Below, piece after piece: positions 41,082 to 64,000 of a stretch of 64,000 nt of DNA. Each line of letters begins with the position of its first letter. Within the stretch, counting starts at the first letter, position 1. This stretch comes from Botryllus schlosseri (taxonomy: Eukaryota), in NCBI GenBank assembly GCA_051294905.1, contig CM119384.1, forward strand, positions 9,362,001 to 9,426,000. Reading direction: 5' to 3'. A program made the translations under genes and the position numbers. The notes under the pieces were generated by a model, which was not told the DNA's origin, searched no databases, and worked only from the letters and a program-made list of their open reading frames with translations.

Positions 41082-44000
41082 ATGTATTTGCTCAAAAACG
41101 ATCTTTATGGCGTAAGTGTGATTTAATAGGACCGTCTCATTCTCTTTATTCTGGCAGGTAATCAGCTTAGATATATTAGATGGCATTTTCTAATCCGTCT
41201 CATTCTGTGGTCACAATGTCAAGAATTGCAAACCATCTGGACAGGCAAGAGCTGTGTGATGTGGTTCTTGTAGGTAAGTGAATTGAATTAACAATAGTTT
41301 GACCTAATCAGGAATCTTATTTTCATTGAAAACATTTTCATCATCATATAATCTGAATATAGATCATTCCAACTTTTCTAGTCAATTGACAATCAACTTA
41401 TCTACATCTTATATCCATATCCAAGTTGTTCTAGATAGACTACATGAATATGTTTTGCATGCAGGCACTATACTAACATAAAGGATTCTAGACATGTTGC
41501 CAACAATTACTGCTTGGATAAATTGATTTGTGACTTATTGACAATATCTTATCTTACTTTCAGTAAATTCAAAAAGGATTCCTGCTCACAAGCTTGTTCT
41601 TTCTTCGACCTCTGATTATTTCCATGCAATGTTCAACAACAGTCTTCGCGAGTCTTCGCAATCAGAAGTTGAATTGACAGATGTGGACCCTGATGCGCTG
41701 GAAGAACTTGTCAAGTACATGTACTCGGGTATGTGTTTTTTGTGAAATTTTAGTAGCTGTCGGTGGCTTTTGAAAATGACATTCAACTGCTAGGTGGGAT
41801 AGCCATTTTGATGCAGATACGTTACTGCCTATGAATTTGGTATTGCAGCTTTAAGCATAAAAGTTTATCTGAATTTCACTTCAACTTTGTAACTTGTTGA
41901 AATTGAGTTACATTTTAAAAAAATGTCTCCAGCTGACTTCGGTATGTTGCAAAATTTCAATGTCTCATCTTGTGGAAATGATGTTTTGACTCACATTTTT
42001 GGTGTCACGGATTTTCAAATGCTTTCGATATATTAGTTCAACAACACAGGTCACAAACGGTCACGAACAATCACAGGTCATAAACGTGGGCTGGACTCTT
42101 GTCGAGATAGGACAGAGGCAATGTCGACTTAATCTGAAGAAAAATTAGGTTAGCAAGTGTATCAACAATACTTGCTTCCATCGTGATATGATGTTGTACG
42201 GTGATATTGTCATTGCAGATGTGTCCCTATGTCTACTCCTGAATGTTAGCGGAATTCAGATTACTCGCACACTCAGTAATGCACTTGCGTTATCAAAATT
42301 TTGTATTTACTGTAACCATCATCCATGAGCAACGCAATTTCCTGGTCACAGGACTGCATCAGCCATCGCATGAATATAATGCATGATGTGACTGATGTAT
42401 TTCTGCAGCTTGTTCGAACTGAAATATCTACTCTTAACTTACCACTGTTGTCAAATTATTACTGGCATTGCATTACAACCAGACTTATACAAACTGCTAG
42501 ATTTTCAAAAAGTGCAACTTAAACTACTCAATTTTCAAAATCCTCAACTAGAACTACGTAAAAAACGTTAGTTAGTTGACCGTAAACCAGCCAAATGGGT
42601 AGTTTGTAGTCTGATTGCAACTGATACGTTTTTCACTACGGGCGGACGGCCCGAGAATTATCTACAATTCACAAAGAATCATAGGCATTACTGGCATATT
42701 CAGTTTCAACACGGTCCGTATTTCAATTATTTTAGGGAAAGTGGAAATTCGGGAAGACAACGTCGAAAGGCTATTGACGACTGCGAACTTACTGCAGTTG
42801 ACGGCTGTGCTTGAAGCCTCGTGCGACTTCCTCAGAAATCAGTTGCATCCTTCGAACTGTCTCGGCATACATCGGTTTGCGGACATTCAGGGATGTTCCG
42901 AGCTGCACAAGGCAGCGCACTTATACTGCATGGTGAGGAAATGGCTAGGGCATTGTTTTCGGGTTTCGCGTCATCGATATTTAAAATTCATATTCACAGT
43001 ACACTGTATAATCTCTTCTTTCTGTGTTTGAGCTTGTCTGATTTTGGCTTTTCAAAATTGAACAGTGTTATGGTTATCTGGCTTGGATGTCAGAATTGTA
43101 AATGGTGATATGATAATGAAGCTATACTTTTGTAACTGGTGAAATTTCTCTTGAAGTTGCTCACTTCTTACTATGTATGTGTCAGCCTTGGTGACAGAGA
43201 TTATGGTAAAAATGTATGTATGTTTCCGTCCTTCTAATATGAAAAAATAAATCCACAGGAACATTTCAGCGACGTAGCGCAAAATCGCGAGTTTCTGCAA
43301 CTGCCGTACAAACAGGTGCGTTGTCTTTTAGCTTTGGCATTTTTTTTTTGCCTGATATGCGATGATAACATGGAATTTGAATCAAAAATCTTTGAAGGAC
43401 AAGATAAATTTATTGTTTAATTGGAAAAGCCACAAAAACGTGAAGTGAAACACAAAGATTCCAACGTGTCTCAGCACTTTATTCTGTTATTAATCATTCA
43501 CTAATTGAAAAATCAATTGCTGTATATCACTTTCTGAAATATATACCTTACCCAACAGATGTGAATCTGGATCATTTGTGTTTGCGCGATACCGTCTGTC
43601 ATCAATATTAGTCACACAAATGCCCAGCAATTAGCGATGCATTATGCATGGCCGGCTTGCTATAGCAATCTGGGAATTATGGATGTCCTAAAAGTCACAG
43701 CTGTAGCAGATTCAGATCAGCATACGTCGGGTTGGATCTCAGTCTGGTGTTGTTTCGCAGCATAAGAAGGACTTTTAGAATGGAAATTTTCAATCTAAAA
43801 TACTAACGACTACTGTTTTATTTCGCCTACATGCTTTCTTACTGCATAGCATGCCTAATCCCACTGATCCCAAAATCACGCCTTTTTGATACAGTATAAT
43901 ATGTCTTGAATGATTCCAGATTGCATTAAAATTGGACGACTGCATTTAAATTCAAATAAATGAAGCTGACTTTTTTTCAAAATCAATTGCCGGTACAGGA

Positions 44001-47000
44001 AACAGTACCTTCTTATTGGTAATCAATTCAATTCAATTCAATTCAATTTTCGGCTGACTCTCATCAAAACTCGGCAAAACTGTTGTTCTGATTCGAAATG
44101 TAACAATAATTTGATTGGCTGAGGGAATAATGTAAAAAAACTAAGACAGTGTACTGTAGTAACAATACACAAGAAATGTTAACAACTTACAAGTAAGTAT
44201 TATTATTATTACACCACACAAACAACAAATTTAATTCATGTAAGTACTAAACAGACGTTCGCTACTGATGACAGTCGGTCGAAAAGCTTTATCAGAGAAA
44301 ATTTACAGTATGAAGTTATTAGCTCGTGTAATTCTGAAGTTCTCTGCCCTGAATGGCATGTTTGTATAACTTTTTATTCAAAATGCCTTTTTTCTGTAGA
44401 TTTCCCTGCTGGTGGAAAGTGATGATATTAATATCTCGAAAGAGGAAGATATGTTCAAAGCGGTGTTGGCGTGGGTCGAGTATAACACCGACAAGAGGAA
44501 GGACATGTTGCCTGAACTGCTTTCGCGCGTCCGATTGACTAACGTCTCAAAAGAGGTTTGCCATTACATGGTTTACATCTAGAAAGAGGCTTATGGTTCT
44601 CATACGCTAAACCTGACGTTGGTACTCTTAACGTCTAAAAATACACCCACTGGTAGGGCTGCGAAAAATCGAGTATCTGGGGGAGACGAGTATTCAAGTA
44701 CCACCTGTAATGACGTCATAACAGCGCTGATGATTTAACCGGTTGGCACCCGCTGCCATTTCAGACAAATTTTACTTCCTATTTAAAAATTTAAAAATTG
44801 TACCTTCATGGGATCCGAACATGGTAACCTAGGCATCGTTCGATTCAAAACTTCAATGCGCAGCCGATTGCACCACTCAAATCAATATAGATTGTTAATT
44901 GTTATATGAAAACTACAGCCAACCATAAATACATATTGGCACATTAGCTGGTGTAAATACGCTGAGTAAGATTGTTCTTATAACGATTTATACATGACTA
45001 TTAGCCTTTATTTTGATACTAGTAGAATGGTATAGGAAACAGCAATTCACACAAACAATCTATGAAGGTATATCACTATTACAACTCGAGATATATCACG
45101 TTGTGGGACGAGTGTTCAACTGTTCAGTGTTCAGCTATGCGTTTCCGTGAGACCATGTAACTGGCGGATATTTTTGTCCTACGGCCTATCACATAGCTTT
45201 TGAACACCTTATATAGAACGAATATCCAATATGAAGATATGAGTGGACTTGTACGGATACTGGATTTTCGCAGAAAGAAACTGCTACAGCCTAGGACAGC
45301 TGGAACGAAAGATATAGTGCACTATCTGAGAGTGGTCGAAGACGCACCCGTTGACGGGACAGCATATTTGTAACACATTTGTTTACGGTGATTCATATCG
45401 GATTTTCACGTTTTAGGCATAATTAATGTCAAATAATAAGGTTTCAATGAACTTGCACGAATATCTATTCACAGAAATTAACCGCGACTACCTAGCACAA
45501 TTAGAACGGTACATATCGAGGTTTCTAACACGCGATTACGGTACGATTCCCTCGCACCGGCATTTTTTGTCCGCAAGTTTTTAATGCAAGTTACACTTCA
45601 ATCAAAATATTTTATTTTATTTCTGAACCATGAGTATTTAGTCTACCCTCCACTAATCATTTCAATTGATTCTCAACCCAGATTTGAGTACTAGAATCGT
45701 TGTTTCCGCCCTACAACAATTCAAATAAGCGTGGCGTTTGCATGGAATTTCGAGACTATCGCAAACCCGTACTTTGCAGTTTCTCGCCGATAACGTTCAG
45801 CCGCACCCGTTGATCCGAGAGTCTCTCGCGTGTCAGCACCTAGTCGTGCAGAGCTTCATGTACCACATGATGTCCGAGCGCTGCCCGCCGGCACAATCGC
45901 CAAGAAAGTCCACAATGGGTTTTCTGTACGCCATCGGAGGCATAGACAGTGGAAAAGGTATGTAACATGCCTGACTGTAGCATGCGTGGCGTTGTGTAAA
46001 CTGGTCGAACCGTCGAACCGGTGTCGTCAATTGAACCACTAGCAGGCCACGTTTGGTGTTGTCGCGATAAAATCTGGTGATTTCTCGTTTTCGCAGTCTT
46101 GAGCGACATTGGCAGGTGAAACGGAGTTCTGTTTTTGTGTGGTGGATGATATGATTGAAGTAATTTCTTATAAATCCACGACTGCTGCGCATTTGCGACA
46201 GACAGATGGACATTTGCTGTCAGAGGTGGTTGGTAAAGAAGTACTTGTAGTTTTTCAAGGTATATACTTTACTTACGCTCATGGTTAAGTCTTTAGCCTA
46301 CTTTTTAGGCGTAACTGGTCCTAGAACACTCAATTTTTAGCTTACTCAGAAATCACTATTTCTACTTGAGTATAAATTGATGACATCACTCTAACTTTAA
46401 CCACCTGGTTTTTGTTGATTTAACTTTGTGTTCCGCAATACTTTGCAGTCATCCAAACCAAGAACTTTGTGTGATATTCTCTGTTACATCGGCTACATAC
46501 TTATGTTTTTGTTAATCGGCTGTAATGTTAATTTTTAATCACATTTATGTTTCGCCACGTCAGGATTTTCAAGTGAGTTGGGTGTTTCGTTGGTGCCATG
46601 CGGACTGACTATTTCCTCAAAGCATGGAGGGTATGGGTCAAATCTGTGAAGTGAATCTCCTTGTTTTGTGTTTGGCCCACCTACTGTTTTTATTTCGATA
46701 TTAATGGGTCCACTTCCCATGTTGACGCTATTGGCAAATAACTGTAAACAGCGATCTTGGATCAGCCGTGCTAGTCATGTGTTCGGTCGGCCTCACAAAT
46801 AGGAGATTCGACCACTAGCTTTCCCAAGAATGCTCGCGATTTGACCCATCCCAATCACGCGACACGCAGTGTTCATCGCAACATGATACAATTCATGGCA
46901 TGCTATTTTATGGACATTGTATCGGGGCGTTGAAGTGCACGAAACGGCCTTATTATTTTGTGTCTGCGACGTAATGACGTCGCGTATTGAGAGTTTAAAT

Positions 47001-50000
47001 GCTCGGAATTAGGGATGGGCGAAATCAAATCAAACAACTGATTCGGATCAGACGATGGAAATTTGGCACAAATCGAATCACCGTGAGATATTTGTCGATC
47101 ACAATGAAATTCAAAGTGATTTGCTCAGTGGGTCGCATTCAAGATAGAACTGTATTTTGTAACGAAATGATCACAGGTCCCAAGTGACGTAATGGTGTCA
47201 CAGTCGTGTTGCTTCCAGCAACGGGAATACGTTGGCGTAAAGATAGCTGGAGTTTGAAAACATTTGTTTGCTCGATTGGAAACCATAGAGATCCTTTCAA
47301 GGGATCGATTAACTTTGATGCTTGACACCGCTATACTTCATCATTCCGAACCGTCTCTATAACTACCTTTCCGAGGATAATTTGTATCGGATGGCCGAGA
47401 TCAACTGGAGAAGCATCTGTGATATTGACACCTTCCCGTTCATCAATTATGTTCAGGGTAGCGGGACATCTCAACTCGACATTAGCATGAATGGGCATGA
47501 TTCTTGAATGAGGTAGTTGAGTGCTAATGCAACTGAAGTGCCTTTATGCGATGTCGCTTCAAATTGAAAAGGATCTCTGAGCATGAAAGCGCTTCGTCCG
47601 TTGATTTGATATTCTGATTTGATTCATGTGGGATGATAAAGAATTTGATGCCCATCCCTACCCATGATAGCCTGGTGTGCCGCCATAAACAAGCTATGCA
47701 ACTAATCCAGACGTACATTGTAAGCTTTTATTGTACAATGTACTGCGCATATTCTTGCTTATATGTGTTGCAAAGTACACTCTTCTATCATAGTATGTTC
47801 GGTCGCTGTGATCTGTATAGCACCAATATACCGATATACGTTTGGGCAAATATATTGGTATTTCCCAAAACGATGACGCTTCGAAAGAAATTTGCTGTGG
47901 AGAATCGCTTTTTCCGTCAATTTTTCAAGAATCTTGGGTCATGTCATTTTGAGTGTGTCTGAACTAGTGTGCAGAGTTGTTTTCGCAGTATGACTAATAG
48001 AGCCTGACCGATATCGAAAAAAACGGTAATTAGCACCTTCACCAGTGCGATAACCCCGATATATTCATCTGATATTCAAAAGATATGACGTCTAGCTTGA
48101 AGCACATTTTTAAAATTTCGAAACATCTAGTTGGATAGTTTTGAAGCCATTGCTATGCCTGGACTATTGGACAGAAATAAACTACGGTAGAAAGGCGGCA
48201 TCTGGACACCTGTTCGCTATATGCATTATATCAATATTCCGAGTCTATTAGTGCCAGATTATATTTCCCTGACTCCATCCGACCATGTTGTGACATTGCC
48301 GATAGTTTTTTACCTAAACAGACGATATCAATATTTCTTTCAAAGTATGATATCGACTCTGTATTATCGACCCGGCTCTAGTGACTACTGCCTTTGTTTT
48401 GTGACCAAGCCTGTCAATCCATTGTCGCAATCACTTTATTTGCCACGATAATATTAACCCGATTGCGCAATGAATTCGTCAGGCGCCGGCACTATCGAGC
48501 GTTTCGACCCGAGAAGCAATTCTTGGACGACATTTGCTTCGATGACTGGTCGTCGTTTGCAATTCGGGGTGGCGATCCTGGAGGACAAGCTTTTCATCGT
48601 GGGCGGACGCGACGGCTTGAAAACCTTGAACTCTGTGGAGTGTTTCAACGCCAAAACCAAAGTCTGGAATTCCCTGCCCGCAGTCGCGACGCACAGACAC
48701 GGTCTCGGTGAGTGATGCTGTCCAGGGTTGTAATGACTCGAGTCACGATTTTTTGGTGACTCGACTTCACTCGAGTCATTTTTTCAAATGCGTAAAATGA
48801 CTATAGACTGGAGTAAATTTTTGCATTGTCCCGACTTGTACTCAAGTCATTGTGCATGGCTCGAACCGAGTCATATGACTCGAGACTAGGACGGCCTGGA
48901 CAGACATTTCATTGCAACTTCGAAGAATAGTAAAGTTATCACATTATTGGTACTTCGTCTATCAGTCCTGATACTTGGATAATAAGGTCAGAAACTGTTG
49001 AGACTGAGAAAAATTGCTGTATTATGAATGCGAGGCATCATATCACTCGGGCAGAGTTGAAAAGAGTGGGAGTGGGTCGAACCGGATTGAACTGAAAACT
49101 GAACAGTCAACAATTGGACTCGGACTCGAGTCAAAACGCTCGGACTCAGCACTCTACTAACTGACTTGGACTCGGACTTGAAATGCAAATGACGTGAGAT
49201 TGACTTGCAACTCGGAATCTTGTGACTTGGTTACAATCCTGATGCTCTCCAAGTGTGATTTGTTTCATTTCTACTTTCAAATCACAATCTTATAACTTGG
49301 ACAACTTTACACGTAACACTTTAGTTTTCTAAAACATTTGTTGCACTTAGTACATTGGAGCATGGTTCCGAGGTGGTCAGTAACGAAGAACTTCTACTTT
49401 TTGGAGTATTCGAATAGGTTTTATCTGCTTGCACTACTTAAGTGGGTATGGTTTTGGACTACTTCTACTTTGTCAGTTTTAGGGCAAAACTAGGCCCAGA
49501 ATACTTACTTTTTCTTACTTGGAAATCGCTACTGCTTTTACTTGTGTAGTAATTTACAACATTATTTATATTTCTACAACACGCGAAACAATAACCTCGT
49601 ATTGGTAACATATTCACTAAAAATTTTGGACTCTCAAACGTTAGTAGTAGGGTTAATCCAATTTGAAGTGTAGAAACTATTTTGTCCGTATGACGTTATT
49701 ATAACGAAAACTAACAACTAGCAAAAGGGCAAGATATGGTAGTAACATTACATGACAAATGTTACCGAGTACATATCTGGATATAAATAACGGAAAACAG
49801 CTACGCAATACCAGCAAAGACTACTTTGACGTCTACGGAAAGGTTAAAATACAGTTGTAGATTTGGCTATCTGTAGCATATTAATCGAGAAAGGACAGGT
49901 CATCCGGCATTCGTAGACTATCTATCTTAAGTCTATTCAGTCTTAACGCACCTTGTGTAAGTGTCTCGGTCTAATTTTTTCTAATTTTAAATGGAATTGC

Positions 50001-52333
50001 GTCTGGATGCCGAGGTCTATTTCGTTGTACAGTCAACGTTGAACCATCCTGCAGTCCTGCATCATTCGACGTTCCGTTTACAGGTGTCGCCGAGCTGAAC
50101 GGTCCCCTGTATGCAGTGGGTGGTCATGACGGTTGGAGTTATCTCAACACTGTGGAACGTTGGGACCCGCAAGCACGTTCTTGGAGCTTTGTGGCGCCAA
50201 TGGCGCATCCGAGAAGCACACTCGGCATTGCGGTTTTGCTGGGAAAGTATGTTCATTTTTCGATCAATGTCATAAACAAAACGATAGTGTTGGCTAATGT
50301 TCGCACAGTCAATCAGCTTTGAATACGTATATTGTACTATTTGGTTATGCAATATTTGGTTAAGCAATATTTGGTTTTGTTTGTCCCAACTATACCCAAA
50401 ATTCATTGCTCCGCTAGGTATCAAAACGAGCAAGTTCCATGGTTAAAATTCAGCTATAGTATACCTTTTCTTGATTATGCTTATACGTGAGCAGGTTTGA
50501 AATCCTCATGCAATCCAATCCGTTTACATTCTGCGCAGTGACCTTAGAACAAGCAAAATTCGTAATCTGTCTCTAGCTCTCTCTTCCGCTAAGCCTTATT
50601 TGAATAGAAAGACTTTGCCTATATTTACACTTGGTCCACGATCACAAACTGCAAGCAAAATTCCCTTGGGTACACATGTCTACAATGCAATTGATCACTG
50701 ACTGTCCAATTGAATTAGGACACTTTATTTTTGGTTTATTTCTGCTTGAAGGGACAAATGATACTCCCTCAAGGCCCTTGGGATTTGCCTTGTCATATAA
50801 TCAAGATGTAGCATACAAGGTACTGTATCGATTCTAACTCCTTAAGGTCTGGGTGATCAAAAGCTCTTGAAATATCAGCCGATATTCTTATATTCTTTAG
50901 GTTCGATTGATTGCCAGTCAGCGATGCATAGCTGCTAACTGCTAATATCTGTCCATGATGACTTGAAGATTTTGAGATCTAGTTGCTTGAAGGGGCACCG
51001 CACTCTAAAATACAATATGGTCTCAAATGACAGATTAAATCGGTAAAGAATTTCGATGTTCGAACAACTTATCTTTGAAGAAGACTGCGTCCAATTGTTT
51101 CACAACTTGGCCGATTAGCGCCATCTAGGGATATACACGAGCCGAAACAAGTTTTACCTATGAGCGATCTTTTCGTATCCCGCACATTTATCCGGTGCCC
51201 GATCTATTACAGGCTGTACGCGGTGGGCGGTCGGGATGGAAGCTCATGCCTGCGGTCTGTGGAATGTTTCGATCCGCATACCAACAAATGGACGAGTCGA
51301 GCTGCCATGCTGAAACGCAGAGGCGGAGTCGGCGTCGGGGTGTGTGGAGGTTGTATTTACGCGATTGGTGGCCACGACGCACCGGCCAGCAATCAGATGT
51401 CCAGACTGCAAGAAACCGTGGACAGGTAGTGTGGATGCAGTGTATGCTTGCTTGTCACCGGGCTCAAAGCCTATAACAACGAACGCGAGGGAAACAAATA
51501 GCCGGACATGGTCAAGTGGAAGTAGAATTAACGCCGTAAATTTTCCCGCAAAGTACAAGTAGTGATTTCCAAGACATGTCAAAAGATCTCTGAGTAATAA
51601 TAGAAAATAAAGGTATACTGTAATCGTAATCGATTACAGTGGTAATCGTAATCGATTACAGTGGTGCAGTAATCGCGCCGTGTCTGATCAGTGCTCATGG
51701 GCTGTATTTTCAGACTGACGAAGAGTAGATATCGATTGAAATTTACCTGGGTGTGTGGACATGTAAGCATGGGACACTTCAGCATACGACACTTGGGCAT
51801 GTGGGTTAAAATTAGGGTTAGGTTAGGGTTCTTTTTACGATTATAAAGTCTCGTGCTGAAGTGTCGAATGATCAACTGTAGTTTTTCATTGTGTCGCATG
51901 GTCAAATGTCGGACAACCGTTTACCTTTAGCTCTAAAACTAGGCCCAAATGTTGCGGCATATCAACGTGGAATCAAACGACCAGATAGAAACTTATCCGT
52001 CACTCCCGGAGCTCTATTCTGTAACAGATATGACCCCGTGACGGATCAATGGACTGTTGTCGCGCCTATGAGCGTTCCCAGAGACGCTGTGGGAATCTGC
52101 GTGATGGGCGGAAGACTTTATGCTTGTGGAGGCTACGACGGTACTACGATGCATTCTAGATCGCTTGCTTCACGTTGTATTTCGAGACGTCAATCTGTTT
52201 TTTGCGCGCCTTCACAGGTCAATCGTATCTCGTCACGTGCGAATCGTACTGCCCCGAGAAAAACGAATGGAGGTACGAACCGAATTTGAACACGGGAAGG
52301 GCCGGCACCGTGGTCGTGCGATTGAGCAGCTGA
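41082..52333 (+). CDS. KLHL5: Kelch-like BTB-BACK-Kelch protein of the KLHL1/4/5 group (Cullin-3 substrate-adaptor family); 12 coding exons, about 568 aa, start may lie further upstream
   Basis: Exons 41082-41111, 41180-41273, 41564-41728, 42736-42932, 43259-43315, 44400-44555, 45780-45957, 48483-48707, 50084-50246, 51213-51425, 52028-52140, 52218-52333 (1707 nt). Motifs [125 protein letters not shown]. The symbol marks the subfamily, not strict orthology. Confidence 0.93.
46535..47532 (-). CDS. Candidate nested antisense exons inside a KLHL intron
   Basis: 47532-47367 (CACTTCAG acceptor, 55 open codons, GTAGTT donor) joins in phase 0 to 46741-46535 (TGTTTACAG acceptor, 68 codons then TAA). 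No family recognised. Confidence 0.25.
48723..49241. mobile_element. Family D hAT-like MITE, copy 2, 15 nt into a KLHL intron
   Basis: CAGGGTTGTAA / TTACAATCCTG; TSD ATGCTGTC / ATGCTCTC (7 of 8). Confidence 0.9.
51620..51663. repeat. 22-bp tandem duplication containing the palindrome GTAATCGATTAC
   Basis: GTAATCGTAATCGATTACAGTG twice. Confidence 0.8.
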
Positions 52334-55361: not shown

Positions 55362-58300
55362 ATGGGCTATTTAAGAAGATACTTCATATCTGTCATCGTA
55401 GCATTCGTGTGCGGCGAACGTGTGTCATGCTCCGACTCCAACAGTAAAGAACGCGTGAAGCGCCGATTCGCAGCACTAACACAGCCGGCCGGGACATCTT
55501 CAGGTCCTACGAGGCCTAATCTCGTAATGTCCTGTGACATTAACGAAGGTATATTAGATGATTTTTTGTGGGTTCTCCACATACATAATTGAATTATTTT
55601 GTTAACAGCATGACATGATCTTATTTGAAGCAGTATAAACTCAAACAATACATTTCTACTTTATGCTGGTATCGCATGAACCTGTCAGCAATGCCATTTC
55701 TTTATATGTAACATAACAGCCAATGTAAACGATTGTCAGTAAGTTTCATTTACAATCTGAACGATATGCATTCCCAAGTCCGAGTAAGTTTACAATATTA
55801 AAATACTTGTTAAAAAGCAATATCAGCCTCATATTCACGGTAGACGCTGCGAATTTCATCAATCGTGTAACATTGACGGACCACCGTGAAGCTTCGTAAT
55901 GGTAAAGCTTACATATTTATTTTCAAAACCTGCTGATGGACTTCACTTCGTTTCCAGACATTCATAGAAACTACCACACGCATTTTGGAATGTGTGACTC
56001 ACGGATTATAAACAAATGTACTATGAAAGCCCCTCATACAATCTATGCGCCAATACATCAATAAATCACAATGAAATGTGGCGTTTTACAACAAGCGGAA
56101 AAGGGGATGTCGAATTTGCTATTGTATACTGTTGCAATTCGTGTGATATTTCAAGTGCAAACTATTTACGTTTTTTTTCGAGTTCAAATGTCGGTAGACA
56201 GTGTCCGGAATTCGATCTTTGAACAGTTGTTCAGATGTTCACCCTGTGCCCCGTAAACACCATGTCTGAACTGAGATTCCAACATTTTTATCCTGTGAAC
56301 ACACCGTGTAATTCACCGCATAAACGCCACCCAATTTCGTACTTTCCATAGACTGGTCGTTATTTACTTACTTTGACCGATTACTGCCGATGAATCATGG
56401 AACGTAACTCAATTTACAGCTTTTAGTAAACTCTAACGCGCAAGTCGATTCGCACTCGCCTCTTGTCAATAGAGAATTCCTGATCGATTTGACTTGTGGA
56501 ATTATGAAATTGAACTTAAATAATGATTGGAAAATAATGGCGTAATCGGAAAAGAAAATAATCTAAACCGTAACCACTCGTGCGTGACGCGACGCCTACA
56601 TCTGATGAATTACGCCACAAGCAGAGTGTCACTGAACTTGGTCAACTCCAATAGAAAGGTTACGCTCTACTCCATGTGAAACAGTGATTTGAAAGACGGG
56701 TCAACACTACTACCTATCCAACACATAAAAATTAACATACTTGATGGTACAGATGGACTCTGGTCTAGTCCCAGGTTACCAGAAATATGATTTGTCCATT
56801 TCAACTCAGATGGATACGAGCAAGAAGACGCCTTGGTGTTGAACCTGCGATTTGCCGAAAATTCGAATGATTTCGTGGAGTCGATCAAGCAGCAGCAGCA
56901 GGAAATCGCAGATCAAGTGAAGGAAATCAAAAAGCTATTCAAGCAGACGCGCAAAGAGCAAGTATTACAGCTATATTTAATCGAGCATACGGGCTCCGCG
57001 CGCTCTTTATGTCGCATGCACACTCACCTATAGGTGCAACGGTCTGACATTGGTGTCGGTAGCTTGTCGGTCATGGGGCGAAACTACAGACTCAAGTGTG
57101 ATAATATCACCCTTTCGAATGTTTAATTTCTTTGTTATTCGCATATCATAACCATAATCAGCGGATCTACTTTTGTGTCTGTAATGTAGTTGCACTCGTG
57201 CCTAGTTCACATGTAGGGGAGATTTGGTACCGATGGATAAAAAATTGCAAAATGATCTCCGGGCCCCAAATGTCCAGCCAACAACAGCAGATCGTTTGCT
57301 GGCTCAACACTTCTATACAAGCTCTACCTACCGCGGATATACATACACGAATATCCGCCTTTCAAAGAGTATTTATGAAAGTTTAAAATGTGTTGCTCGA
57401 AAGTATCATCGGTGAAATAGCATGTTGTAGCGATAAAGTACCACGGGATGAAAAATTGCAAAATGATCTCCGGTCCCCAAATGTCCAGCCAATAACAGCA
57501 GATCGTTTGCTGGCTCAACACTTCTATACAAGCTCTACCTACCGCGGATATACATACACGGATATCCGCCTTTCAAAAAGTATTTATGAAAGTTTAAAAT
57601 GTGTTGCTCGAAAGTATCATCGGTGAAATTGCATGTTGTAGCGATAAAGTACCACGGGTAATTATGACATAGAGTCCCCGGTATGTGGGCGTGTTTGTGT
57701 TGTTGAATGATTAGTTAGTCCAAGTGATCTGATTGATTTGGCCGTGTTATCACCGACCCCCATGCTATCAATGTTGTCATTGAATTAAAAAATGTCTACG
57801 CAATGATGGTATTGAATGAAAATAATATGTGTCGTCCTATAGCCTGATACAAGTTGGGGGGTAAAGTTGTTTATTCATTCCAGTAGTAACACATGAATTA
57901 TATGAAAAAACACAATTCGCAACTTGAGTCACCTCGACAATATGAAAAATAAAGTTGGCACAATACCCGCCATTTACGATGGCGGGGTGAAGATTTCACT
58001 TCACAATAAAAATGATTGTTGGTTTGTTCGTGTTTGAGGTTAAAAATAAAAATGTATACCACCGAAACAGAAATCATCTGTCACAGACCCTGTAACTCGC
58101 GTAGCTCCAATTTATTTGCATGTGAGGAAATATTCTGCCGGCATGCAATTGTAAAACAAATTGATGGAGTGTGATCGTGGGATTGTCATATAGATTTTTT
58201 CAATTATTTTCGGTTCCAGTGTCTCATTGGTACCACATCTCCCCTATGTCTACATACCCAGTAAAAGCGGGGAATAAAATCATAAGAATGTTATTAAACC

Positions 58301-61300
58301 ATACGATGTTACATATATCACCTTGATAAGGCGCAAATGCATGAATCAACAAGTAGAAGCTGACTATATATTGCAGAATGTGTTATTCAACATCGCCTCT
58401 AGTTTGCGATCCCTGAGCATGAGCAGATACGGCTTAGCGTAACACATGATATATTCATGACGTAGATTTGCAATGTCAATAATTACCATAATTCTTACAA
58501 TTACGGCTTGCATCTATATGTGCGGCACACTCTCAAATGCGTCGCCCTAATTTGGTTCCCGCGTTTTCAGGCTAAGCTACTTCAAATTCAAAAAGGAATC
58601 CGAGATCAGAATGCTCAGATGACTGCCCTTTATAGCAACCTTTTAAGAAACAAGCCGGATTCGTTGACGGCGTCGCATGATATTGTGCAAGAGAGGTAAG
58701 GTGTTGGTGATCGTTGAGAATCCTTTTAATTAATGCAATTCTACAAAAATTCAGCGACTTAGGCGACTAATATCGGATTTATTACAAGGCCTCATGAGCT
58801 TGGGAACAAACATTTTCCATCCAGTCAAAATGACCATGCGGTCGGTATTTTAATCGATTTGTTGTTATAAAATGTACTATTAATGGTTACTCAGACGTAA
58901 ATTACGTGACGTCGATTTGCTGTTAAATATCCCCGTATAAAAGCAAACGTTAGTGCAAGTATTCCACTGTACGATTTTGAATAGAAACCTACCAACTCTG
59001 TTATGGCGCGCGGACATGCTATGTGTACGTTCATGTCACAACTGAGATATATTTGTCTTTGAAACAGCCTTGGATTTGAAATGCACAGAATTAATCCTTA
59101 TACATTCAGAAAACTAGAAGATATAAATGTAAAGTGCAGGTTTTATCCGGAAAATACTTGAATTCGATGCCGATGAGATAATAAGTTTACCAGATTCAAA
59201 ATATCATACTTATGGATACTTACATACGCTCGAGTAAATGTCCATTTGTCCCCTAAATACAGCGGAGAGGCTGATGCAGTCCCGAGCCAGCGGATGCTAC
59301 GAAGCTCACAAATTGCGGCATCGGTGTCGAACCGAGCTGCTAACAAGAGTATGGAGGTGAAAAGTAACTGATGTAGTCACCCTTATGTGGATCACATCTA
59401 ATGTTCTTGTTACACAGAAAGATGGTGTAGTAATTCAATCGCGGTCATTCGCAGTACAGATCCCGAGCAATCGAAGTGGTAACAGTGATGTAGCTGAGAG
59501 AGCCGCTGAGAGACTTGTAAGTCACGTGATGGGCGCTGCAGCAGAACTAGGTAAATCATGTTATGTGTCATTTCATTATTCAAATACAATTCAAAGGCAA
59601 GACAGCCTAATATGATAACTACTTCTCCGTCTATCTATATTCTATACTTTACTCAACCTATCGAACACCCTATACATAGATACATTTCTGTTAGTAAAGT
59701 CCTTTATCATAATCTATGATTGTCTTGAAGGACTCATTCGGCAATTTTGATGTATTAGAAATTATTCCTAGCCGCCCTGAGCCTGACTACATATTCTCCA
59801 TTGTTATTTGACACATGGTACAGATAAATGAAACCATATACAAATTTGTAGATGCAATAATTACAATTCTAGAAATGAAGAGACTCTTGGTGGTACGGAA
59901 CTTCGGTATACATTCATATTGAAATTAACTCAAAAATGCTAGGTTTGTTTCAATATGAGCATATTAGTCATTTATGGAATTGTGCTTAGTCGCGCCGACT
60001 GACAGAGCTAATTGTTGAAAAACTACGAACTCAATAGGTTTGTCCTATAGGCAATTAGGCTTAATTAGGAAAATTCAAGTCCTAAACTGACAATGTGTAA
60101 GAGTCAAGGAGCCAGTAATCACGCCAAAGCACACGTAAGTAGTCGCAATTCGATCATCCCCGGAATCAGGTCATTTTCAAGGGCTCAGACCTCACGCGCG
60201 ACAAACAACAGGATAGCGTCACGCTAACGCTACGCCGGAGGATCAAGAGCTGACACGTGACGCTCTGCCGATACTCCACAAGTCTGATAGCTAAAAGTCC
60301 ACTGTTTGAAAGCAGTGGTATCTATGGAATTTTGGGTATTTCATTTCCTGGTTTGTGTGGCCAGTCGCGCTCGCTATCCAACAGCATCACGCTTTCAAAT
60401 AAACGGGACACGAGTTGGCAGCTGCAGATTTTTTTGAAATCCCATACCGAATGGGCTTGCCAACCGAGTTTAATCTGCAACTGGAATCGGATTGCCGTGT
60501 AATCTCCGACCTGCATCACGGCATCAAACGCTAAACGCGGTGGAACTGGTAACTCGAGAACAGTTTTATGTGCCCGCCCATGTGAACACGACACTCTGTG
60601 GTTGGCGCTATGACGTCATTATTCTAAGTACAGACCACGTGGGAATCTTTCATAGAGCACAAATACGTTGCGGGTTATTTGATTCCTTTCAGCACCTGCT
60701 ATTAGAAATTCGGTTTCTTTGCTTTAATCAAGACATACTATAGGCTATAATTTTTTTGCAATAGCCACCTGCGGTGCCTTTAAAAGCGCAATAAATAGAC
60801 CCTAGTGCCGGTATGCTAGGTTTGTTGATAAGAAGTATTTATTTACCTATGATTGAAAAGCACCTATAGAAAGTTATAGGAAAATTCCATTCCTATCTTA
60901 CTGAATTCGCTACGTAACGCAGAGAAACAGTACTCACAATATCACATAACTACCGCGCATGCACGGAGCTGGCAATCTAATGCCGAACATATCCGTATAT
61001 AGGAAATTGCATTGAACTTTCTATTACCTCATGTGATATAGACCGAAATTGATTTTTCAGCGTGGAAGTGGCGCCAAAGATCTATTGTGCCGTCATCATG
61101 ACATAGCTTCACGACCCAAAATGTTTGAGCAGCCAAATCGAGTCAATGCATTTATTTCATTACAGAACCAGAGAATTATCCAAAAGATTGTCAGAGGTGT
61201 GGAGACGATGAGTATTGCACCACTGATGGTACACGAATATCATCTGTTAAAAGTTTTGTCACTCCATATAACTCGTCAGCGCCTGTCGCAGAATCCACAA

Positions 61301-63940
61301 CACGATGCCATCCATGTACGCTATGCGGCCCCGGTTATGAGATCACGGCACCGTGTTCACGAAGTAGCGACATTTTATGTGAGGACATAAACGAATGCGT
61401 TACCGGCACCTGTGGACTGCCGGAAGCCCAGTGCGTGAATACACCTGGTGGATATCTCTGCGTAGGTAATGTAACATCGTATGTAGGAACAAGATAAGAT
61501 ATCTTACCTTACTGTTAATTCCAAGGTCGATCATTTGTTTTTCAGAAGGTGAGGCAGTGGAGTAGTATAGTCCAAGTCAAACCACACATTTGTTTCATAA
61601 TCACCCCACCAACTGCCGCCCTTATAGAATAGCATAGAGCTGCCGATTTGTCGTGCCGGTAAATCTTCATAAGATGTACGCGAATTGTTCTTCGCGTGGG
61701 ATACAGCTGTATCCAAATGACGTACCGGCATGGCCTAGTGTAACTTAGTTTGAATGCCATATAAAAGACCACAAATCAGATATTGAAGCCGACCATTATA
61801 TAAGGGAACTCGTCCACGTATTAGGAACACATATTTTACTTTCCCGCCAGATCAGCTGATATTTATAGAATGTGATTTTTTTATTTCACTTTAGGAGGTG
61901 ACGCATCGTGTATCGACGATTACTACTTCAACAGAAGATCTTCTCAATGCGAACCATGCACTACCTGCCCATCTTTGGAGCATATTATTGTACCTTGTTC
62001 GAAATTCAGCGATTCTGTTTGCAGGTGAATTTACTTTCGGAAGCCCTTTTCGTCAAAGGAGCCATTTTTAACCTTATATTTTCAATTGTCAATGCCAATC
62101 CACTGTAACGTCACAATTAAAGATTCATGACATCATCGCTAAAAAGACATGTTTTAAACAAGGGCCCTTTTTTAAACATGTTTGTCTTAAATTTATTTTT
62201 GTTTTAAATACAACCCTAGCTACACACTTTTATCCGATCCGATCCCAGATAAACCTTCAATGATTCGATATATTCCATTACTAATAGATTTGCAATGCTA
62301 CACGTTACTTTCGTGGCCCCGCTTACAGGTAACGGGCATTGACAGTGGACAAGCCTACACATGCGGTGTTGTCTGACACCATTATAAGCCTCGAACTCAA
62401 GTCTCAATTGAGACGACCAGAGCGTGAAATAAGCCTATGCCCAATTAGCAACATTTACGCCGATTGGGCGGGTTTCTTATATGGACACTAACCGACGATC
62501 GAGCGAACTACTCAATCAATCATGTTGCAGAACTGACGATGTTGAACAACTTTCCGATGTATGGACTGGTGCGCTCACAAAGCCAAATAAGTTTTTGAAG
62601 AAAATACGAGATCTCGGAGGCGGTTTTTCACTGCCCTTTTCAGGTGCTGATAATACGTAGCGGAAGCTATTTTACCTATTTATTAAACTACCTGACTATT
62701 GGTTGGCTTCCGTTATTTATGAAATTCCCTTACCTCACGAAGTGTATCCGCAAAGATATCAGTTGCATAGGTAGTGCACACTTAATCCATGCCTCTTGGT
62801 TTCTCCGTCATTGGCGGGTAGGCCTACCATTCAATGGCGTTCATGCCCGCTTTTTTGCTCCAGACATCACTTTGCATAATCAGACGGTTGTCGAAATCAT
62901 AAAGAGCAAACGCCGGTCCAGGGATCGCACGGGCTCGTCCTCTTTGCGGAAAGAAAAAGAAAGCAAGATGAAACTTCTACAGCACGGAATCATTTGGATG
63001 GAATATAACATGGCGATAGTTCATTCTTGTCGCAGCTATATTCAGGTGTGGGTGTTTTTTTAGCGTGTAACTATAATTTATTATTGGATGATTGAGAGGA
63101 TCCTATATTGAAACGTTTTGCGGGTCTATAGATCCCAGGTTAAGAACCAATGCCTTCAACACGCTGTTACAGGTTTCTTTAATGATATCAAACGAAGATG
63201 ACCACGCGACAAATGATGGCGCCGTTTTAGGGCGCACGAGGTCGAGAATCGTTCATAGCGATTCATCTTACCGGTCTTTGGTCGCTACCAGATTGGAACA
63301 CACAACCGGTGACCGCTACAAATTCGTGAGCATGTCGGCGGTGGCCGAGATTCACCCGAAGCAAAATATTAAAGTAAGTATAGGATAAGTGGTTCTATCT
63401 TTGGAATATTGAGAAGTGCTTCTTCATCTTAACCTGGGTTCACACGAACCGCAGGAGTTCGCTGAGCTGGCTCCAGGGCTTTACTGGAGGTCAAGACATA
63501 CACCCAACTTTTTGACTTCGCGGACCCCTTTTGAACCGTCACGAAGTTCCGCGGACCCCCAAAGTTTTAGTTCAATTTTAGCTCCATTATCGCGCAACCG
63601 TCATCTGTTCTGTGCAAATATCAGTTGTAGGCTAGTGATAAACAGCAATAGAATAACAAATTAACCATTCATTAAAATGATATCATAGCCTACTATATAT
63701 GTAGAAATTCGGAAGGCTTTTATGATTTCAAAGCCAATTCTGTAGCTAAATTTCCTGCCTACGTGGCCATGTCTTGATAATCCGCGCCGGATATTTGATA
63801 TGAACCAATGCCGAACATTCATTTCCACAAAGATATAGGTGGTGGCGAACGTAATAATATCGCTCGACGCTTCCGACGATACCTTTGGCTATATGATCGC
63901 AACACAGGACATCAAAACTGAGAAACAGTTTTTAGTGTGA
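55362..63940 (+). CDS. Uncharacterised putative secreted protein: signal peptide, furin-like site, coiled coil, TNFR-Cys, EGF-Ca, TNFR-Cys, probable C1q/TNF-like domain (about 550 aa in the simplest model)
   Basis: Phase-compatible exons 55362-55548, 56810-56961, 58571-58695, 59263-59356, 59418-59550, 61166-61465, 61895-62024, [62288-62328 tentative], 62864-63045, 63173-63373, [63839-63940 tentative]. Features: MGYLRRYFISVIVAFVCGERVSC, RVKRR, heptad-like IKQQQQEIADQVKEIKKLF...LLQIQKGIRDQNAQMTALYSNLL, CHPCTLCGPGYEITAPCSRSSDILC, DINECVTGTCGLPEAQCVNTPGGYLC, CEPCTTCPSLEHIIVPCSKFSDSVC. Extra exons in 59551-61165 and 62025-62863 are possible. Confidence 0.75.
57216..58244. mobile_element. Pogo/Tc1-mariner-like non-autonomous element with TA TSD, in intron 2 of the TNFR/EGF gene
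   Basis: TA then GGGGAGATTTGGTACC ... GGTACCACATCTCCCC then TA: 16-bp TIR with 1 mismatch. Confidence 0.75.
57239..57660. repeat. Direct tandem duplication, 2 x 211 bp, inside the 57216-58244 element
   Basis: Track ORFs 57224-57415 and 57390-57626 end in the same peptide 211 nt apart; few mismatches between units. Confidence 0.92.
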
Positions 63941-64000
63941 ACAATGAACATATAACGTCCAGCATATAGTCATTTCTATCTAGCAGCTCTTCTTGAAGTT

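What the first reader, a model, noticed from the sequence alone, without database searches (positions are those of the whole stretch)
55362..63940. Secreted protein combining TNF-receptor-type cysteine repeats with a probable TNF/C1q-fold domain
Seen: signal peptide, RVKRR, two exons of heptad-like helix, a Ser/Ala linker, then two CxxCxxC...C....D..C repeats flanking a DINEC-type calcium-binding EGF. The C-terminal exons read LLQHGIIWMEYNMAIVHSCRSYIQVSLMISN...FVSMSAVAEIHPKQNIKV...DTFGYMI. Established: CxxCxxC-x(8-9)-C-x4-D-x2-C is the TNFR cysteine-rich pattern, and gC1q/TNF domains carry G-x-Y-x-F-x-Y, V-x-L-x-x-N, S-G-S-A-V-L-x-L-x-x-G-D-x-V and F-S-G-F-L motifs that these segments loosely follow; such domains trimerise, often with a coiled-coil stalk. 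Inference: receptor-like and ligand-like modules of the TNF system in one soluble, probably trimeric and convertase-processed chain, which could act as a decoy, an auto-inhibited ligand or a matrix/immune scaffold. I know no named gene with this layout but cannot exclude uncharacterised homologs.
Basis: partly seen in the sequence, partly recalled or inferred. Interest (0 to 1): 0.78.

Follow-up and report, generated by a model that had tools for sequence, protein, structure and literature searches.

The report
Secreted TNFR-repeat protein, triple TNF/C1q head

Summary
The signal peptide, the RVKR site, the heptad exons, the Ser/Ala linker, two TNFR_c6 repeats around a calcium-binding-EGF-like module, and the exons LLQHGIIWMEY.../VSLMISN...KQNIK are all real.

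Two details are wrong. A 63-nt intron lies inside the first TNFR repeat.

Spliced RNA-derived contigs join 63373 to 64564. The gene has 17 exons and 854 aa, and ends 3955 nt beyond the window. It is collinear end to end (53% identity) with an uncharacterized 915-aa Styela clava protein.

The C-terminal half holds three divergent tandem domains, not one. Pfam finds neither C1q nor TNF in them. AlphaFold models of domains 1 and 2 match only TNF/C1q-superfamily structures (Z up to 10.9).

A complex prediction packs domain 3 against domains 1 and 2: score 0.74, best control 0.11. That mark was reached by 51 of 78 solved complexes and 2 of 108 mismatched pairs.

Best reading: a furin-processed, coiled-coil-oligomerised extracellular protein with a natural single-chain TNF/C1q pseudo-trimer head. 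Its function is inferred.

An overlapping window of the same genome was noted earlier (s1-301061). Nothing was found on other DNA.

The parts
55362..55548 (+). Exon 1. Start codon, signal peptide (aa 1-~23), short propeptide ending in RVKR (aa 31-34), and conserved lone Cys58.
   Evidence: It is the only hydrophobic 19-mer peak in the protein. RVKR aligns with RAKR, and Cys58 with Cys73, of the S. clava ortholog. The donor is GT.
56810..56961 (+). Exon 2, first half of the heptad (coiled-coil-like) stalk.
   Evidence: Heptad a/d hydrophobic occupancy is 62% against 38% background. It is 52% identical to S. clava and ~75% to species 3 contig L013. Splice sites are canonical.
58571..58695 (+). 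Exon 3, second half of the heptad stalk.
   Evidence: Same evidence as exon 2.
59263..59356 (+). Exon 4, Ser/Ala-rich linker.
   Evidence: Supported only by open frame, phase and GT..AG sites. Identity to S. clava is only 12% across the linker. No reads were laid here.
59418..59550 (+). Exon 5, linker.
   Evidence: Supported only by open frame, phase and GT..AG sites. The junction to exon 6 is not verified: one contig (X1) runs at least 53 nt into the intron upstream of 61166.
61166..61228 (+). Exon 6, N-terminal part of TNFR-type cysteine-rich repeat 1.
   Evidence: The joint 61228>61292 appears in contigs of two runs. PS00652 matches the spliced form.
61229..61291 (+).
   Evidence: It is spliced out in runs X1 and X2. 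The equivalent stretch in L013 holds two stops. It is absent from the S. clava protein.
61292..61465 (+). Exon 7, rest of TNFR repeat 1 plus the calcium-binding-EGF-like module (DINEC...CVNTPGGYLC, four cysteines).
   Evidence: Pfam gives TNFR_c6 30.9 bits (cut-off 29.4) and EGF_CA 24.2 bits (cut-off 27). PS01187 matches. The joint 61465>61895 is seen in X1, X2 and 4 raw RNA reads of X21.
61895..62024 (+). Exon 8, TNFR-type cysteine-rich repeat 2.
   Evidence: Pfam TNFR_c6 scores 38.3 bits. PS00652 matches. It is 91% identical in L013. The joint 62024>62531 is supported.
62531..62643 (+). Exon 9, start of TNF/C1q-like domain 1 (D1).
   Evidence: The joint 62643>62864 is supported. It is collinear with S. 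clava.
62864..63045 (+). Exon 10, D1. It holds the basic loop KSKRRSRDR and the strand LLQHGIIWMEYNMAIVHSC.
   Evidence: The joint 63045>63173 is supported. The D1 model (S. clava ortholog) has core strands at pLDDT 70-75, and Foldseek matches only TNF ligands.
63173..63373 (+). Exon 11, D1 (variable loop and the strand pair ...YKFVSMSAVAEIHPKQNIK).
   Evidence: It is joined to 64564 in an X1 contig with a GT..AG intron of 1190 nt. In L013 the next exon (VNLKSAHSDC...) follows after 271 nt.
63374..64000 (+). First 627 nt of intron 11. The gene continues beyond the window with these exons, in window-style coordinates (add 9362000 for G000:C14): 64564-64764, 65046-65157, 66363-66562, 66804-67007, 67220-67345, 67788-67955 (stop). 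They encode the end of D1, then D2 and D3.
Evidence: The joints 63373>64564, 64764>65046, 65157>66363 and 66562>66804 are seen. The last two introns rest on canonical sites and end-to-end collinearity with S. clava, and on the own-genome search that finds all six exons.

Best explanation
The locus is a single-copy, transcribed 17-exon gene. It runs from window 55362 to about 3.9 kb beyond the window's end and encodes an 854-aa secreted protein.

Domain order:
1. Signal peptide.
2. Short propeptide removed at a conserved R-x-K-R furin-type site.
3. One conserved free cysteine.
4. About 70 aa of heptad coiled coil.
5. A poorly conserved Ser/Ala linker.
6. A TNFR-type cysteine-rich repeat.
7. A four-cysteine calcium-binding-EGF-like module.
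8. A second TNFR-type repeat.
9. Immediately after, three divergent tandem TNF/C1q-fold jelly-roll domains (D1, D2, D3) joined by 5-7-residue linkers.

Proposed mechanism. The three domains of one chain pack around a pseudo-threefold axis into a single-chain heterotrimer-like head. This would be the natural counterpart of the C1q A/B/C head, or of engineered single-chain TNF ligands. Its three inter-domain grooves would then differ from one another. The N-terminal coiled coil, and probably the free cysteine, bundle two or more such heads. The rigid disulfide-rich TNFR-EGF-TNFR segment serves as a stalk.

The product would work outside the cell as a multivalent recognition or ligand molecule. 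That is more like C1q-family proteins (signal peptide, stalk, C-terminal head) than like membrane-anchored TNF cytokines.

Shown: gene structure, transcription, domain content, TNF/C1q fold at moderate model confidence, and orthologs.
Inferred: furin cleavage, oligomerisation, the intrachain trimer (computational support only), and any ligand or function.
For: GENE AND TRANSCRIPT
- Splice joints from CRD1 to D3 are seen in contigs of runs X1 and X2, with a few raw RNA reads of X21.
- All 17 exons have GT..AG sites and one open frame.
- The protein is collinear end to end with Styela clava LOC120329222 at 53% identity, and both end in ILW(I/L)PL.
- A third species' contig has the same exons at about 74% identity.
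- The gene is single-copy in this genome.

MODULES
- Pfam TNFR_c6 hits twice above threshold.
- PS00652 matches twice and PS01187 once in both species. The furin RX[KR]R site is conserved. There is no TM segment. The heptad register is unbroken.

FOLD
- The three domains align with each other on shared motifs.
- The D2 AlphaFold model has pLDDT 65.6 and pTM 0.61.
- Its best 50 Foldseek PDB matches are all TNF, CD40L, CD70, cerebellin, C1QL, adiponectin or C1q (E about 1e-5). AFDB/Swiss-Prot gives the same picture.
- The exhaustive VIA-align search gives TNF Z 10.9, TL1A 10.6, APRIL 10.5 and C1qA 9.9, each over 120-135 aligned residues.
- The D1 model is weaker (pLDDT 49.9, core strands 70-75). 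Even so, its best 50 matches are all TNF-family ligands.
- Language-model features of D1, D2 and D3 all point first to the same C1q/TNF cluster: 0.88, 0.92 and 0.93, sharing 173-194 of 256 features.

INTRACHAIN TRIMER
- ESMFold2 was given D1, D2 and D3 as three chains. The score was 0.74 and the best control 0.11. The mark was reached by 51 of 78 solved complexes and 2 of 108 mismatched pairs in the calibration.
- Partner pLDDT was at least 83, and the runs share at least 70% of contacts.
- D3 touches both D1 and D2.
- The linkers are only 5-7 residues long.
Against: - No sequence-level proof of homology to C1q or TNF exists. Pfam PF00386 and PF00229 give no hit on the domains, nor at this locus in the genome scan, although they detect canonical C1q and TNF genes elsewhere in the same genome.
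- PROSITE C1q and TNF signatures are absent. hhalign against this genome's own C1q domains gives 1.7% probability.
- The models were made for the S. clava ortholog, not this protein. They used very shallow alignments (3 species plus internal paralogs). D1 is of low confidence overall.
- The complex pass can come from the model's memory of TNF/C1q trimers. The job also differs from the calibration: three chains, a eukaryote, and chains cut out of one polypeptide.
- Homotrimers of like domains from different chains were not tested.
- Exons 1-5 and the exon 5/6 junction were not covered by reads. One contig retains intron sequence upstream of exon 6.
- Nothing here measures cleavage, oligomeric state, binding or function.
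Confidence: 0.55

Rival explanations
1. Inter-chain assembly. The N-terminal coiled coil is trimeric, and each of D1, D2 and D3 forms a conventional homotrimer with the same domain of two other chains. That would give three stacked or splayed heads per trimer.
For: Homotrimers are the usual state of TNF/C1q domains (established knowledge). A coiled-coil stalk is present. The complex tool cannot tell which member of a family binds.
Against: In this fold the N- and C-termini lie side by side at the base. Linkers of 5-7 residues therefore suit neighbouring protomers of one trimer, not stacked trimers. The domains are only 16-26% identical to each other, like C1q A/B/C. D3 is predicted to touch both D1 and D2, with a score of 0.74 against a best control of 0.11.
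Confidence: 0.15
2. Cis receptor-ligand pairing, the reader's decoy or auto-inhibited-ligand idea. The TNFR-type repeats bind a groove of the chain's own TNF-like head, or of a neighbouring chain. This would mask the head until cleavage, or would act as a soluble decoy for another TNF-family ligand.
For: Bona fide TNFR_c6 repeats and TNF-like domains sit in one chain. A basic loop (KRRSR in this species, RRK in S. clava) lies in D1.
Against: - There are only two repeats, separated by an EGF-like module.
- Repeat 2 ends about 9 residues before the first strand of D1. Its C-terminus is therefore pinned at the base of the head, in the opposite polarity to a receptor bound to a TNF ligand (established knowledge of TNF-TNFR complexes; inference).
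Confidence: 0.12
3. One reading: a 572-aa chain with a single C-terminal TNF/C1q domain, ending at the stop at 63940, which homotrimerises.
For: The frame 63839-63940 is open, has an AG acceptor in the right phase, and ends in a stop. It could be a rare alternative 3' exon.
Against: No joint to 63839 was listed. The contig that crosses the donor at 63373 lands at 64564. The peptide has no counterpart in S. clava or in L013, where the equivalent intron is only 271 nt. It would also cut D1 short before its last strands.
Confidence: 0.03
4. The three domains are jelly rolls that only resemble TNF/C1q, either by convergence or as a different superfamily. The predicted trimer would then be an artefact of model memory.
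For: No sequence method links them to C1q or TNF. The models have moderate to low confidence.
Against: All 50 best PDB matches of both models are TNF/C1q-superfamily members. In the exhaustive search, TNF/C1q-fold proteins fill every row with Z of 8 or more. Three independent feature searches agree. The one hhalign stretch falls on the expected strand pair.
Confidence: 0.07

Closest known systems
Styela clava LOC120329222 isoform X1 (915 aa, 'uncharacterized protein', NCBI)
   Same: It is the ortholog. It has the same order of signal peptide, RAKR site, lone Cys, coiled coil, TNFR_c6, EGF_CA, TNFR_c6 and three tandem domains. Overall identity is 53% (62-66% in the CRDs, D2 and D3), and the C-terminus is the same.
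   Different: Its linker is longer and unrelated (12% identity). It carries no functional annotation, so it names the family but explains nothing.
Engineered single-chain TNF-family ligands and the single-chain C1q head (PDB 4zch APRIL-BAFF-BAFF; 5hzf sc-gC1q)
   Same: Three TNF/C1q jelly rolls in one polypeptide, joined by short linkers, fold into one trimer. Both entries appear among the structural matches of D2, with Z 10.0 and 9.5. This is what the protein most likely works like.
   Different: Those are laboratory constructs of known ligands. This one is natural and highly divergent in sequence, and it carries an N-terminal coiled coil and TNFR/EGF modules.
Natural tandem members: Darwinula stevensoni 'dsEiger' with three tandem THDs (bioRxiv 10.1101/2024.07.27.603686); mussel HcC1qDC6 with three tandem C1q domains (PMC5519582); vertebrate CTRP4 with two C1q domains
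   Same: These carry two or three tandem TNF or C1q domains in one gene. For dsEiger an intrachain heterotrimer was likewise predicted by AlphaFold.
   Different: Their domains are recognisable by Pfam as TNF or C1q. None carries TNFR-type cysteine repeats, an EGF module or a coiled-coil stalk. The present domains fail both Pfam models.
Multimerin / EMILIN family (EMI domain, coiled coils, an EGF in multimerin, C-terminal gC1q)
   Same: The logic is the same: a secreted chain with a coiled-coil stalk, an EGF-like module and a C-terminal C1q-type head (from established knowledge of the family). An EMILIN-2 entry is among the AFDB cluster matches.
   Different: No EMI domain was found. The head is triplicated and not Pfam-C1q. 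TNFR repeats flank the EGF.
TNF receptor superfamily (TNFRSF) ectodomains and soluble decoys such as OPG and DcR3
   Same: The cysteine-rich repeats reach the Pfam TNFR_c6 threshold and match PS00652. The protein is soluble, like the decoy receptors.
   Different: It has only two repeats, split by an EGF-like module. It has no TM segment, death domain or other receptor part. The rest of the chain is ligand-like.
Structure-only leads: ESM Atlas cluster 'si:ch211-252f13.5' (representative 948 aa, TNFR_c6 in 98% of 123 members, mostly Chordata), and AFDB cluster representative A0A6P5A1P0 (765 aa)
   Same: These are the best structural matches of D2: TM 0.71 over 157 residues for the first, and E 1e-6 with 28% identity over 167 columns for the second. 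Size is similar, and for the first the TNFR_c6 content too. They may be the same family in other chordates.
   Different: Their sequences could not be fetched. Three word-indexed searches found only the S. clava protein. Homology and architecture are therefore unverified. No paper in the library names the zebrafish gene.

Membership tests
TNFR/NGFR cysteine-rich repeat (Pfam PF00020, PROSITE PS00652) | Profile score above Pfam's gathering threshold. | tested here: met
   Scores are 30.9 and 38.3 bits against 29.4 for the two repeats, and 38.4 bits in the S. clava ortholog.
TNFR/NGFR cysteine-rich repeat (Pfam PF00020, PROSITE PS00652) | Cysteine pattern C-x(4,6)-[FYH]-x(5,10)-C-x(0,2)-C-x(2,3)-C-x(7,11)-C-x(4,6)-[DNEQSKP]-x(2)-C. 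| tested here: met
   There are two matches in the spliced protein and two in S. clava. The first match appears only after the 63-nt intron is removed.
TNF receptor superfamily (as a receptor) | Transmembrane anchor with a cytoplasmic signalling part, or proven ligand binding as a decoy. | tested here: not met
   The signal peptide is the only hydrophobic segment. Pfam finds no other receptor domain. Ligand binding cannot be tested with these tools.
Calcium-binding EGF (Pfam PF07645, PROSITE PS01187) | Ca-binding consensus D-x-[DN]-E-C ... C-x-[DN]-x4-[FY]-x-C, and six cysteines. | tested here: inconclusive
   PS01187 matches in both species. Pfam scores of 24.2 and 25.3 bits are below the cut-off of 27. 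Only four cysteines precede repeat 2, so the C5-C6 subdomain is missing or shared, and PS00010 is absent.
C1q domain family (Pfam PF00386, PROSITE PS01113) | Sequence profile or signature match. | tested here: not met
   No Pfam hit even at E 10. The genome scan with PF00386 finds 10 matches elsewhere but none at this locus. PS01113 is absent. hhalign against own-genome C1q domains gives 1.7% probability.
TNF ligand family (Pfam PF00229, PROSITE PS00251) | Sequence profile or signature match. | tested here: not met
   No Pfam hit. The genome scan with PF00229 finds 3 matches elsewhere but none here. PS00251 is absent.
TNF ligand family (Pfam PF00229, PROSITE PS00251) | Type II membrane protein: N-terminal cytoplasmic tail and TM anchor, and no signal peptide. 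| tested here: not met
   It has an N-terminal cleavable-type signal peptide and no internal hydrophobic segment.
C1q/TNF superfamily (fold level) | Ten-strand jelly-roll beta sandwich superposable on TNF/C1q structures. | tested here: met
   D2 model: pLDDT 65.6, Z 10.9 (rmsd 3.2, 132 aligned) to TNF and Z 9.9 to C1qA, with all 50 best Foldseek PDB matches in the superfamily. D1 model: pLDDT 49.9, best 50 matches all TNF ligands. D3 has pLDDT 83-84 in the complex run, but no separate fold search was possible. The models are of the S. clava ortholog.
C1q/TNF superfamily (fold level) | Assembly of three domains around a threefold axis. | tested here: met
   This is a prediction only. Score 0.74, best control 0.11. 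The mark was reached by 51 of 78 solved complexes and 2 of 108 mismatched pairs. Partner pLDDT is at least 83 and the runs share at least 70% of contacts. The pass may reflect memory of known trimers.
EMILIN / multimerin | N-terminal EMI domain. | tested here: not met
   Pfam finds no EMI domain in residues 1-300 of the ortholog, even at E 10.

The most novel reading that the evidence does not exclude
This may be the tunicate member of an unstudied, chordate-wide family, with leads in fish 'si:ch211-252f13.5' and an AFDB 765-aa protein. In it a natural single-chain TNF/C1q-type heterotrimer is permanently fused to TNFR-type cysteine repeats. Receptor-like and ligand-like modules of the TNF system would then act in cis or between bundled chains. 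That could mean a self-masking ligand released by convertase cleavage, or a scaffold presenting three different receptor grooves.
Probability: 0.15. Interest if true: 0.85.

Novelty: new variant of a known kind. Interest (0 to 1): 0.6.

Why it matters
TNF and C1q heads normally reach their working form by bringing three chains together. Heterotrimers such as C1q or lymphotoxin need three genes or regulated mixing.

A natural gene that writes three diverged protomers into one chain fixes the stoichiometry. It also creates three different grooves. That is the solution protein engineers reached for single-chain TNF, TRAIL and C1q. Only scattered natural cases have been reported: a preprint on an ostracod Eiger, and a mussel C1qDC.

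This protein also carries genuine TNFR-type repeats in the same chain. I found that combination described nowhere in the searchable literature, and the nearest relatives are labelled 'uncharacterized'.

If the structural leads to fish and another chordate hold, an unnoticed branch of the TNF/C1q superfamily would exist in the closest invertebrate relatives of vertebrates and in vertebrates themselves. That would bear on how the ligand and receptor modules of this system arose.

The practical gain is a corrected gene model: 17 exons and 854 aa, ending beyond the window.

Tried and rejected
SEARCHES THAT FOUND NOTHING USEFUL
- Pfam on the single C-terminal exons and on D1, D2 and D3 of the ortholog at E up to 10 gave no C1q or TNF hit.
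- phmmer of the three-domain region against PDB sequences gave only chance hits such as KaiA and a Fab, with E > 0.2.
- phmmer of exon 11 against 1.84 billion representatives gave two real relatives: P0001, an exon fragment of a third species, and P0003, from S. clava. It also gave two spurious low-complexity hits, rejected after reading them: P0002, a GH18 chitinase with mucin-like repeats, and P0004, a repeat protein.
- Three word-indexed searches with P0003 (regions 415-915, 290-620 and 600-915, the last at E up to 10) found only P0003 itself. The tool's length and word limits mean this does not show absence.
- Own-genome searches found no paralog. The weak match on contig C2 (E 0.12; 44% over 48 aa of a low-complexity loop) was judged to be chance.

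ALIGNMENTS AND MODELS
- Two attempts to build an ortholog alignment of the whole three-domain region from exon fragments failed, because MAFFT cross-aligned the paralogous exons (A1 and A3). I therefore used domain-level alignments with the internal paralogs (A4, A5, A6).
- No model of the whole three-domain chain was made.
- hhalign of the domain profile against this genome's own C1q domains was not significant.
- The D1 model against the ESM Atlas gave only weak, mixed rows.

LITERATURE
- No paper names the zebrafish gene.
- No paper combines TNFR repeats with C1q heterotrimers in ascidians.

- The window's own spliced protein could not be handed to the structure or family tools, because it has no single reference. 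The S. clava ortholog served as proxy.

Full report
WHAT IS IN THE SEQUENCE

The window lies at G000:C14:9362001-9426000 of a 495-Mb eukaryotic assembly. On the + strand, an ATG at 55362 opens a series of exons with canonical GT..AG borders and consistent phases.

- There is a hydrophobic leader. It is the only hydrophobic 19-mer peak in the protein, so there is no membrane anchor.
- RVKR lies at aa 31-34.
- Two exons keep one unbroken heptad register over 72 residues. Hydrophobic residues fill 62% of a/d positions against 38% overall.
- A Ser/Ala-rich linker follows.
- Two TNFR-type cysteine-rich repeats then flank a DINEC-type EGF-like module.

Pfam confirms the repeats above its own thresholds: TNFR_c6 at 30.9 and 38.3 bits against 29.4. 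EGF_CA scores 24.2 bits, below its cut-off of 27. PROSITE PS00652 matches twice and PS01187 once.

I laid two contig sets and two raw RNA runs on window 61101-67100 (L006). Spliced contigs confirm the joints 61465>61895, 62024>62531, 62643>62864 and 63045>63173.

First, a 63-nt in-frame, stop-free intron (61229-61291) is removed from the first TNFR repeat. Only the spliced form matches PS00652. The same stretch holds stop codons in a related species, and the Styela clava protein lacks it.

Further joints are 64764>65046, 65157>66363 and 66562>66804.

The 'DTFGYMI' peptide has no counterpart in either ortholog (E > 0.1). In the related species the equivalent intron is only 271 nt long.

Completing the model with two more canonical introns gives 17 exons and 854 aa. 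The stop is at window-style coordinate 67955, which is 3955 nt beyond the window. An own-genome search with the ortholog's C-terminal part finds exactly these six downstream exons and nothing elsewhere.

That note prompted me to fetch the flank.

ORTHOLOGS

phmmer of exon 11 against 1.84 billion representative proteins gave two real relatives.
- P0003 is a 915-aa 'uncharacterized protein LOC120329222 isoform X1' of Styela clava.
- P0001 is an exon fragment that lies on a 6.2-kb genomic contig of a third species (L013).

The window's protein aligns with P0003 end to end at 53% identity. Identity is 66% in the TNFR-EGF-TNFR block, 50%, 62% and 64% in the three C-terminal domains, and 12% in the linker. 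The shared features are the RAKR site, the lone cysteine before the coiled coil, and the C-terminus ILW(I/L)PL.

L013 carries the same exons at about 74% identity. The organism is therefore most likely an ascidian. This is an inference from the nearest relatives.

THE C-TERMINAL HALF

After the second TNFR repeat come three domains of about 145-190 aa: D1, D2 and D3. They align with one another at 16-26% identity. The shared motifs are (Y)F.F.E.G.V...Y, HSC, a strand pair ...SL....VE.G.RI.V.L, and a final ...LS(I/L)LW.P. The linkers between the last strand of one domain and the first strand of the next are 5-7 residues long.

Sequence methods do not recognise these domains:
- Pfam gives no C1q or TNF hit even at E 10.
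- PF00386 and PF00229 scanned over the whole genome find canonical C1q and TNF genes elsewhere, but nothing at this locus.
- The PROSITE signatures are absent.
- hhalign against this genome's own C1q domains gives 1.7% probability. Its only aligned stretch does fall on the expected strand pair.

Structure-level evidence is consistent.
- D2 of the ortholog was folded with an alignment of the internal paralogs and the window's exon translations (A4). It gives an all-beta model with pLDDT 65.6 and pTM 0.61.
- Its best 50 Foldseek matches in the PDB are all TNF, CD40L, CD70, cerebellins, C1QL, adiponectin or C1q. Swiss-Prot models give the same picture.
- An exhaustive VIA-align search of 48,161 chains puts TNF at Z 10.9 (rmsd 3.2, 132 aligned), TL1A at 10.6, APRIL at 10.5, C1qA at 9.9 and BclA at 9.8. 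The engineered single-chain APRIL-BAFF-BAFF and single-chain C1q heads are among the rows.
Its best 50 matches are nevertheless all TNF-family ligands.
- Language-model features of D1, D2 and D3 each point first to the same C1q/TNF cluster, with scores of 0.88, 0.92 and 0.93.

The fold claim stands at moderate confidence. Membership in Pfam C1q or TNF is not shown.

ASSEMBLY

Three diverged protomers joined by very short linkers are what engineers use to make single-chain TNF ligands. I tested this with the one complex job, giving D1, D2 and D3 as separate chains with D3 as the partner (ESMFold2).
- The score was 0.74 and the best control 0.11. That mark was reached by 51 of 78 solved complexes and 2 of 108 mismatched pairs.
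- Partner pLDDT was at least 83, and the runs share at least 70% of contacts.
- D3 touches both D1 and D2.

The tool warns that a pass may come from memory of known trimers, and that this job differs from its calibration. I take the result as support for likeness to a TNF/C1q trimer, not as proof. Like-with-like homotrimers between chains were not tested and remain the main rival.

MECHANISM PROPOSED

The steps below are inferred unless marked otherwise.
1. The protein is secreted.
2. It is trimmed after RVKR by a furin-type convertase. The site is conserved, but cleavage has not been shown.
3. It is bundled by the coiled coil, perhaps locked by the conserved free cysteine.
4. It displays, on a rigid TNFR-EGF-TNFR stalk, a single-chain pseudo-trimeric head with three non-equivalent grooves.

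In overall logic (signal peptide, stalk, C-terminal head) it resembles C1q-family proteins and multimerin or EMILIN more than type II TNF cytokines. Structurally the domains score slightly better against TNF ligands.

Whether the head binds glycans, microbes or a cell-surface receptor is open. So is whether the TNFR repeats touch it. The second repeat ends only about 9 residues before D1's first strand. That pins it at the base of the head in the opposite polarity to a bound TNF receptor, which argues mildly for a stalk role.

COMPARISON WITH WHAT IS KNOWN

Tandem C1q or TNF domains are not unprecedented:
- HcC1qDC6 of a pearl mussel has three C1q domains (PMC5519582).
- CTRP4 has two.
- A preprint reports an ostracod Eiger with three tandem THDs predicted to form an intrachain heterotrimer (10.1101/2024.07.27.603686).

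None of these carries TNFR repeats, an EGF module or a coiled coil, and their domains are Pfam-recognisable.

The best structural neighbours of D2 among predicted models are two:
- An ESM Atlas cluster named after zebrafish si:ch211-252f13.5. The representative has 948 aa, 98% of the 123 mostly chordate members carry TNFR_c6, and TM is 0.71.
- An unnamed 765-aa AFDB cluster representative with 28% identity over the aligned domain.

These suggest that the family reaches beyond tunicates. I could not fetch those sequences, so this remains a lead. No paper in the library names the zebrafish gene.

LIMITS

- The window's own spliced protein could not be given to the structure tools, so the S. clava ortholog was the proxy.
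- The alignments are shallow.
- Exons 1-5 rest on open frames, splice sites and, for exons 1-3, orthology. One contig retains at least 53 nt of intron upstream of exon 6. An in-frame alternative acceptor exists at 61133, so the exon 5/6 junction is unverified (sequence read directly).
- The last two introns lie outside the stretch where reads were laid.

VERDICT

The gene model differs materially: three tandem domains, a different C-terminus, and an extra intron.

It is best filed as a new variant within the C1q/TNF superfamily, with an undescribed architecture. Interest is moderate to high, at 0.6.

Noticed in passing
window 57235-57447 and 57446-57658: A 213-bp head-to-tail duplication, 97% identical, lies inside intron 2 of the gene.
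   Followed up: partly
window ~63901-64100, and L006:4401-5000 (window-style 65501-66100): Word depth in the RNA-type contig sets is very high here (hundreds to about 2000, against about 5-10 on the exons). There are many contigs and loose ends. These look like abundant, transcribed repeat elements sitting in introns 11 and 13.
   Followed up: no
window 61113-61165: One contig of run X1 continues at least 53 nt upstream of the exon 6 acceptor, so the intron is retained or the RNA is unspliced. An in-frame alternative acceptor at 61132/61133 would add 11 residues, including a cysteine.
   Followed up: partly
window 39479-40105 and ~42600-52300: Two upstream neighbours lie on the + strand. One is a MoaC/MOCS1B-like ORF, also noted earlier as s1-268456. 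The other is a multi-exon gene whose ORF pieces show kelch-repeat-like strings such as ...YAIGG... and ...LYACGGYDG....
   Followed up: no
G000:C14:22024660-22024929 and 22044829-22045026; G000:C11:925561-925695: Canonical Pfam TNF-domain matches occur elsewhere in the genome, two of them 20 kb apart on the same contig as this gene. At least six loci with canonical C1q domains also exist, for example C14:1089671-1090033 inside a 491-aa open frame.
   Followed up: no
L002 (G000:C2:2516073-2516216): An 80-aa open frame matches the variable loop of exon 11 weakly: 44-45% over 47-48 aa, with genome-wide E 0.12. It is probably chance or low complexity.
   Followed up: partly
window-protein aa 404-409 (exon 10, about window 62900-62920): A basic loop inside D1 reads KRRSRD here and in species 3, and HRRKAS in S. 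clava. It could be a second convertase site in an exposed loop. RRSR fits only the minimal RXXR motif, and S. clava does not keep it.
   Followed up: partly
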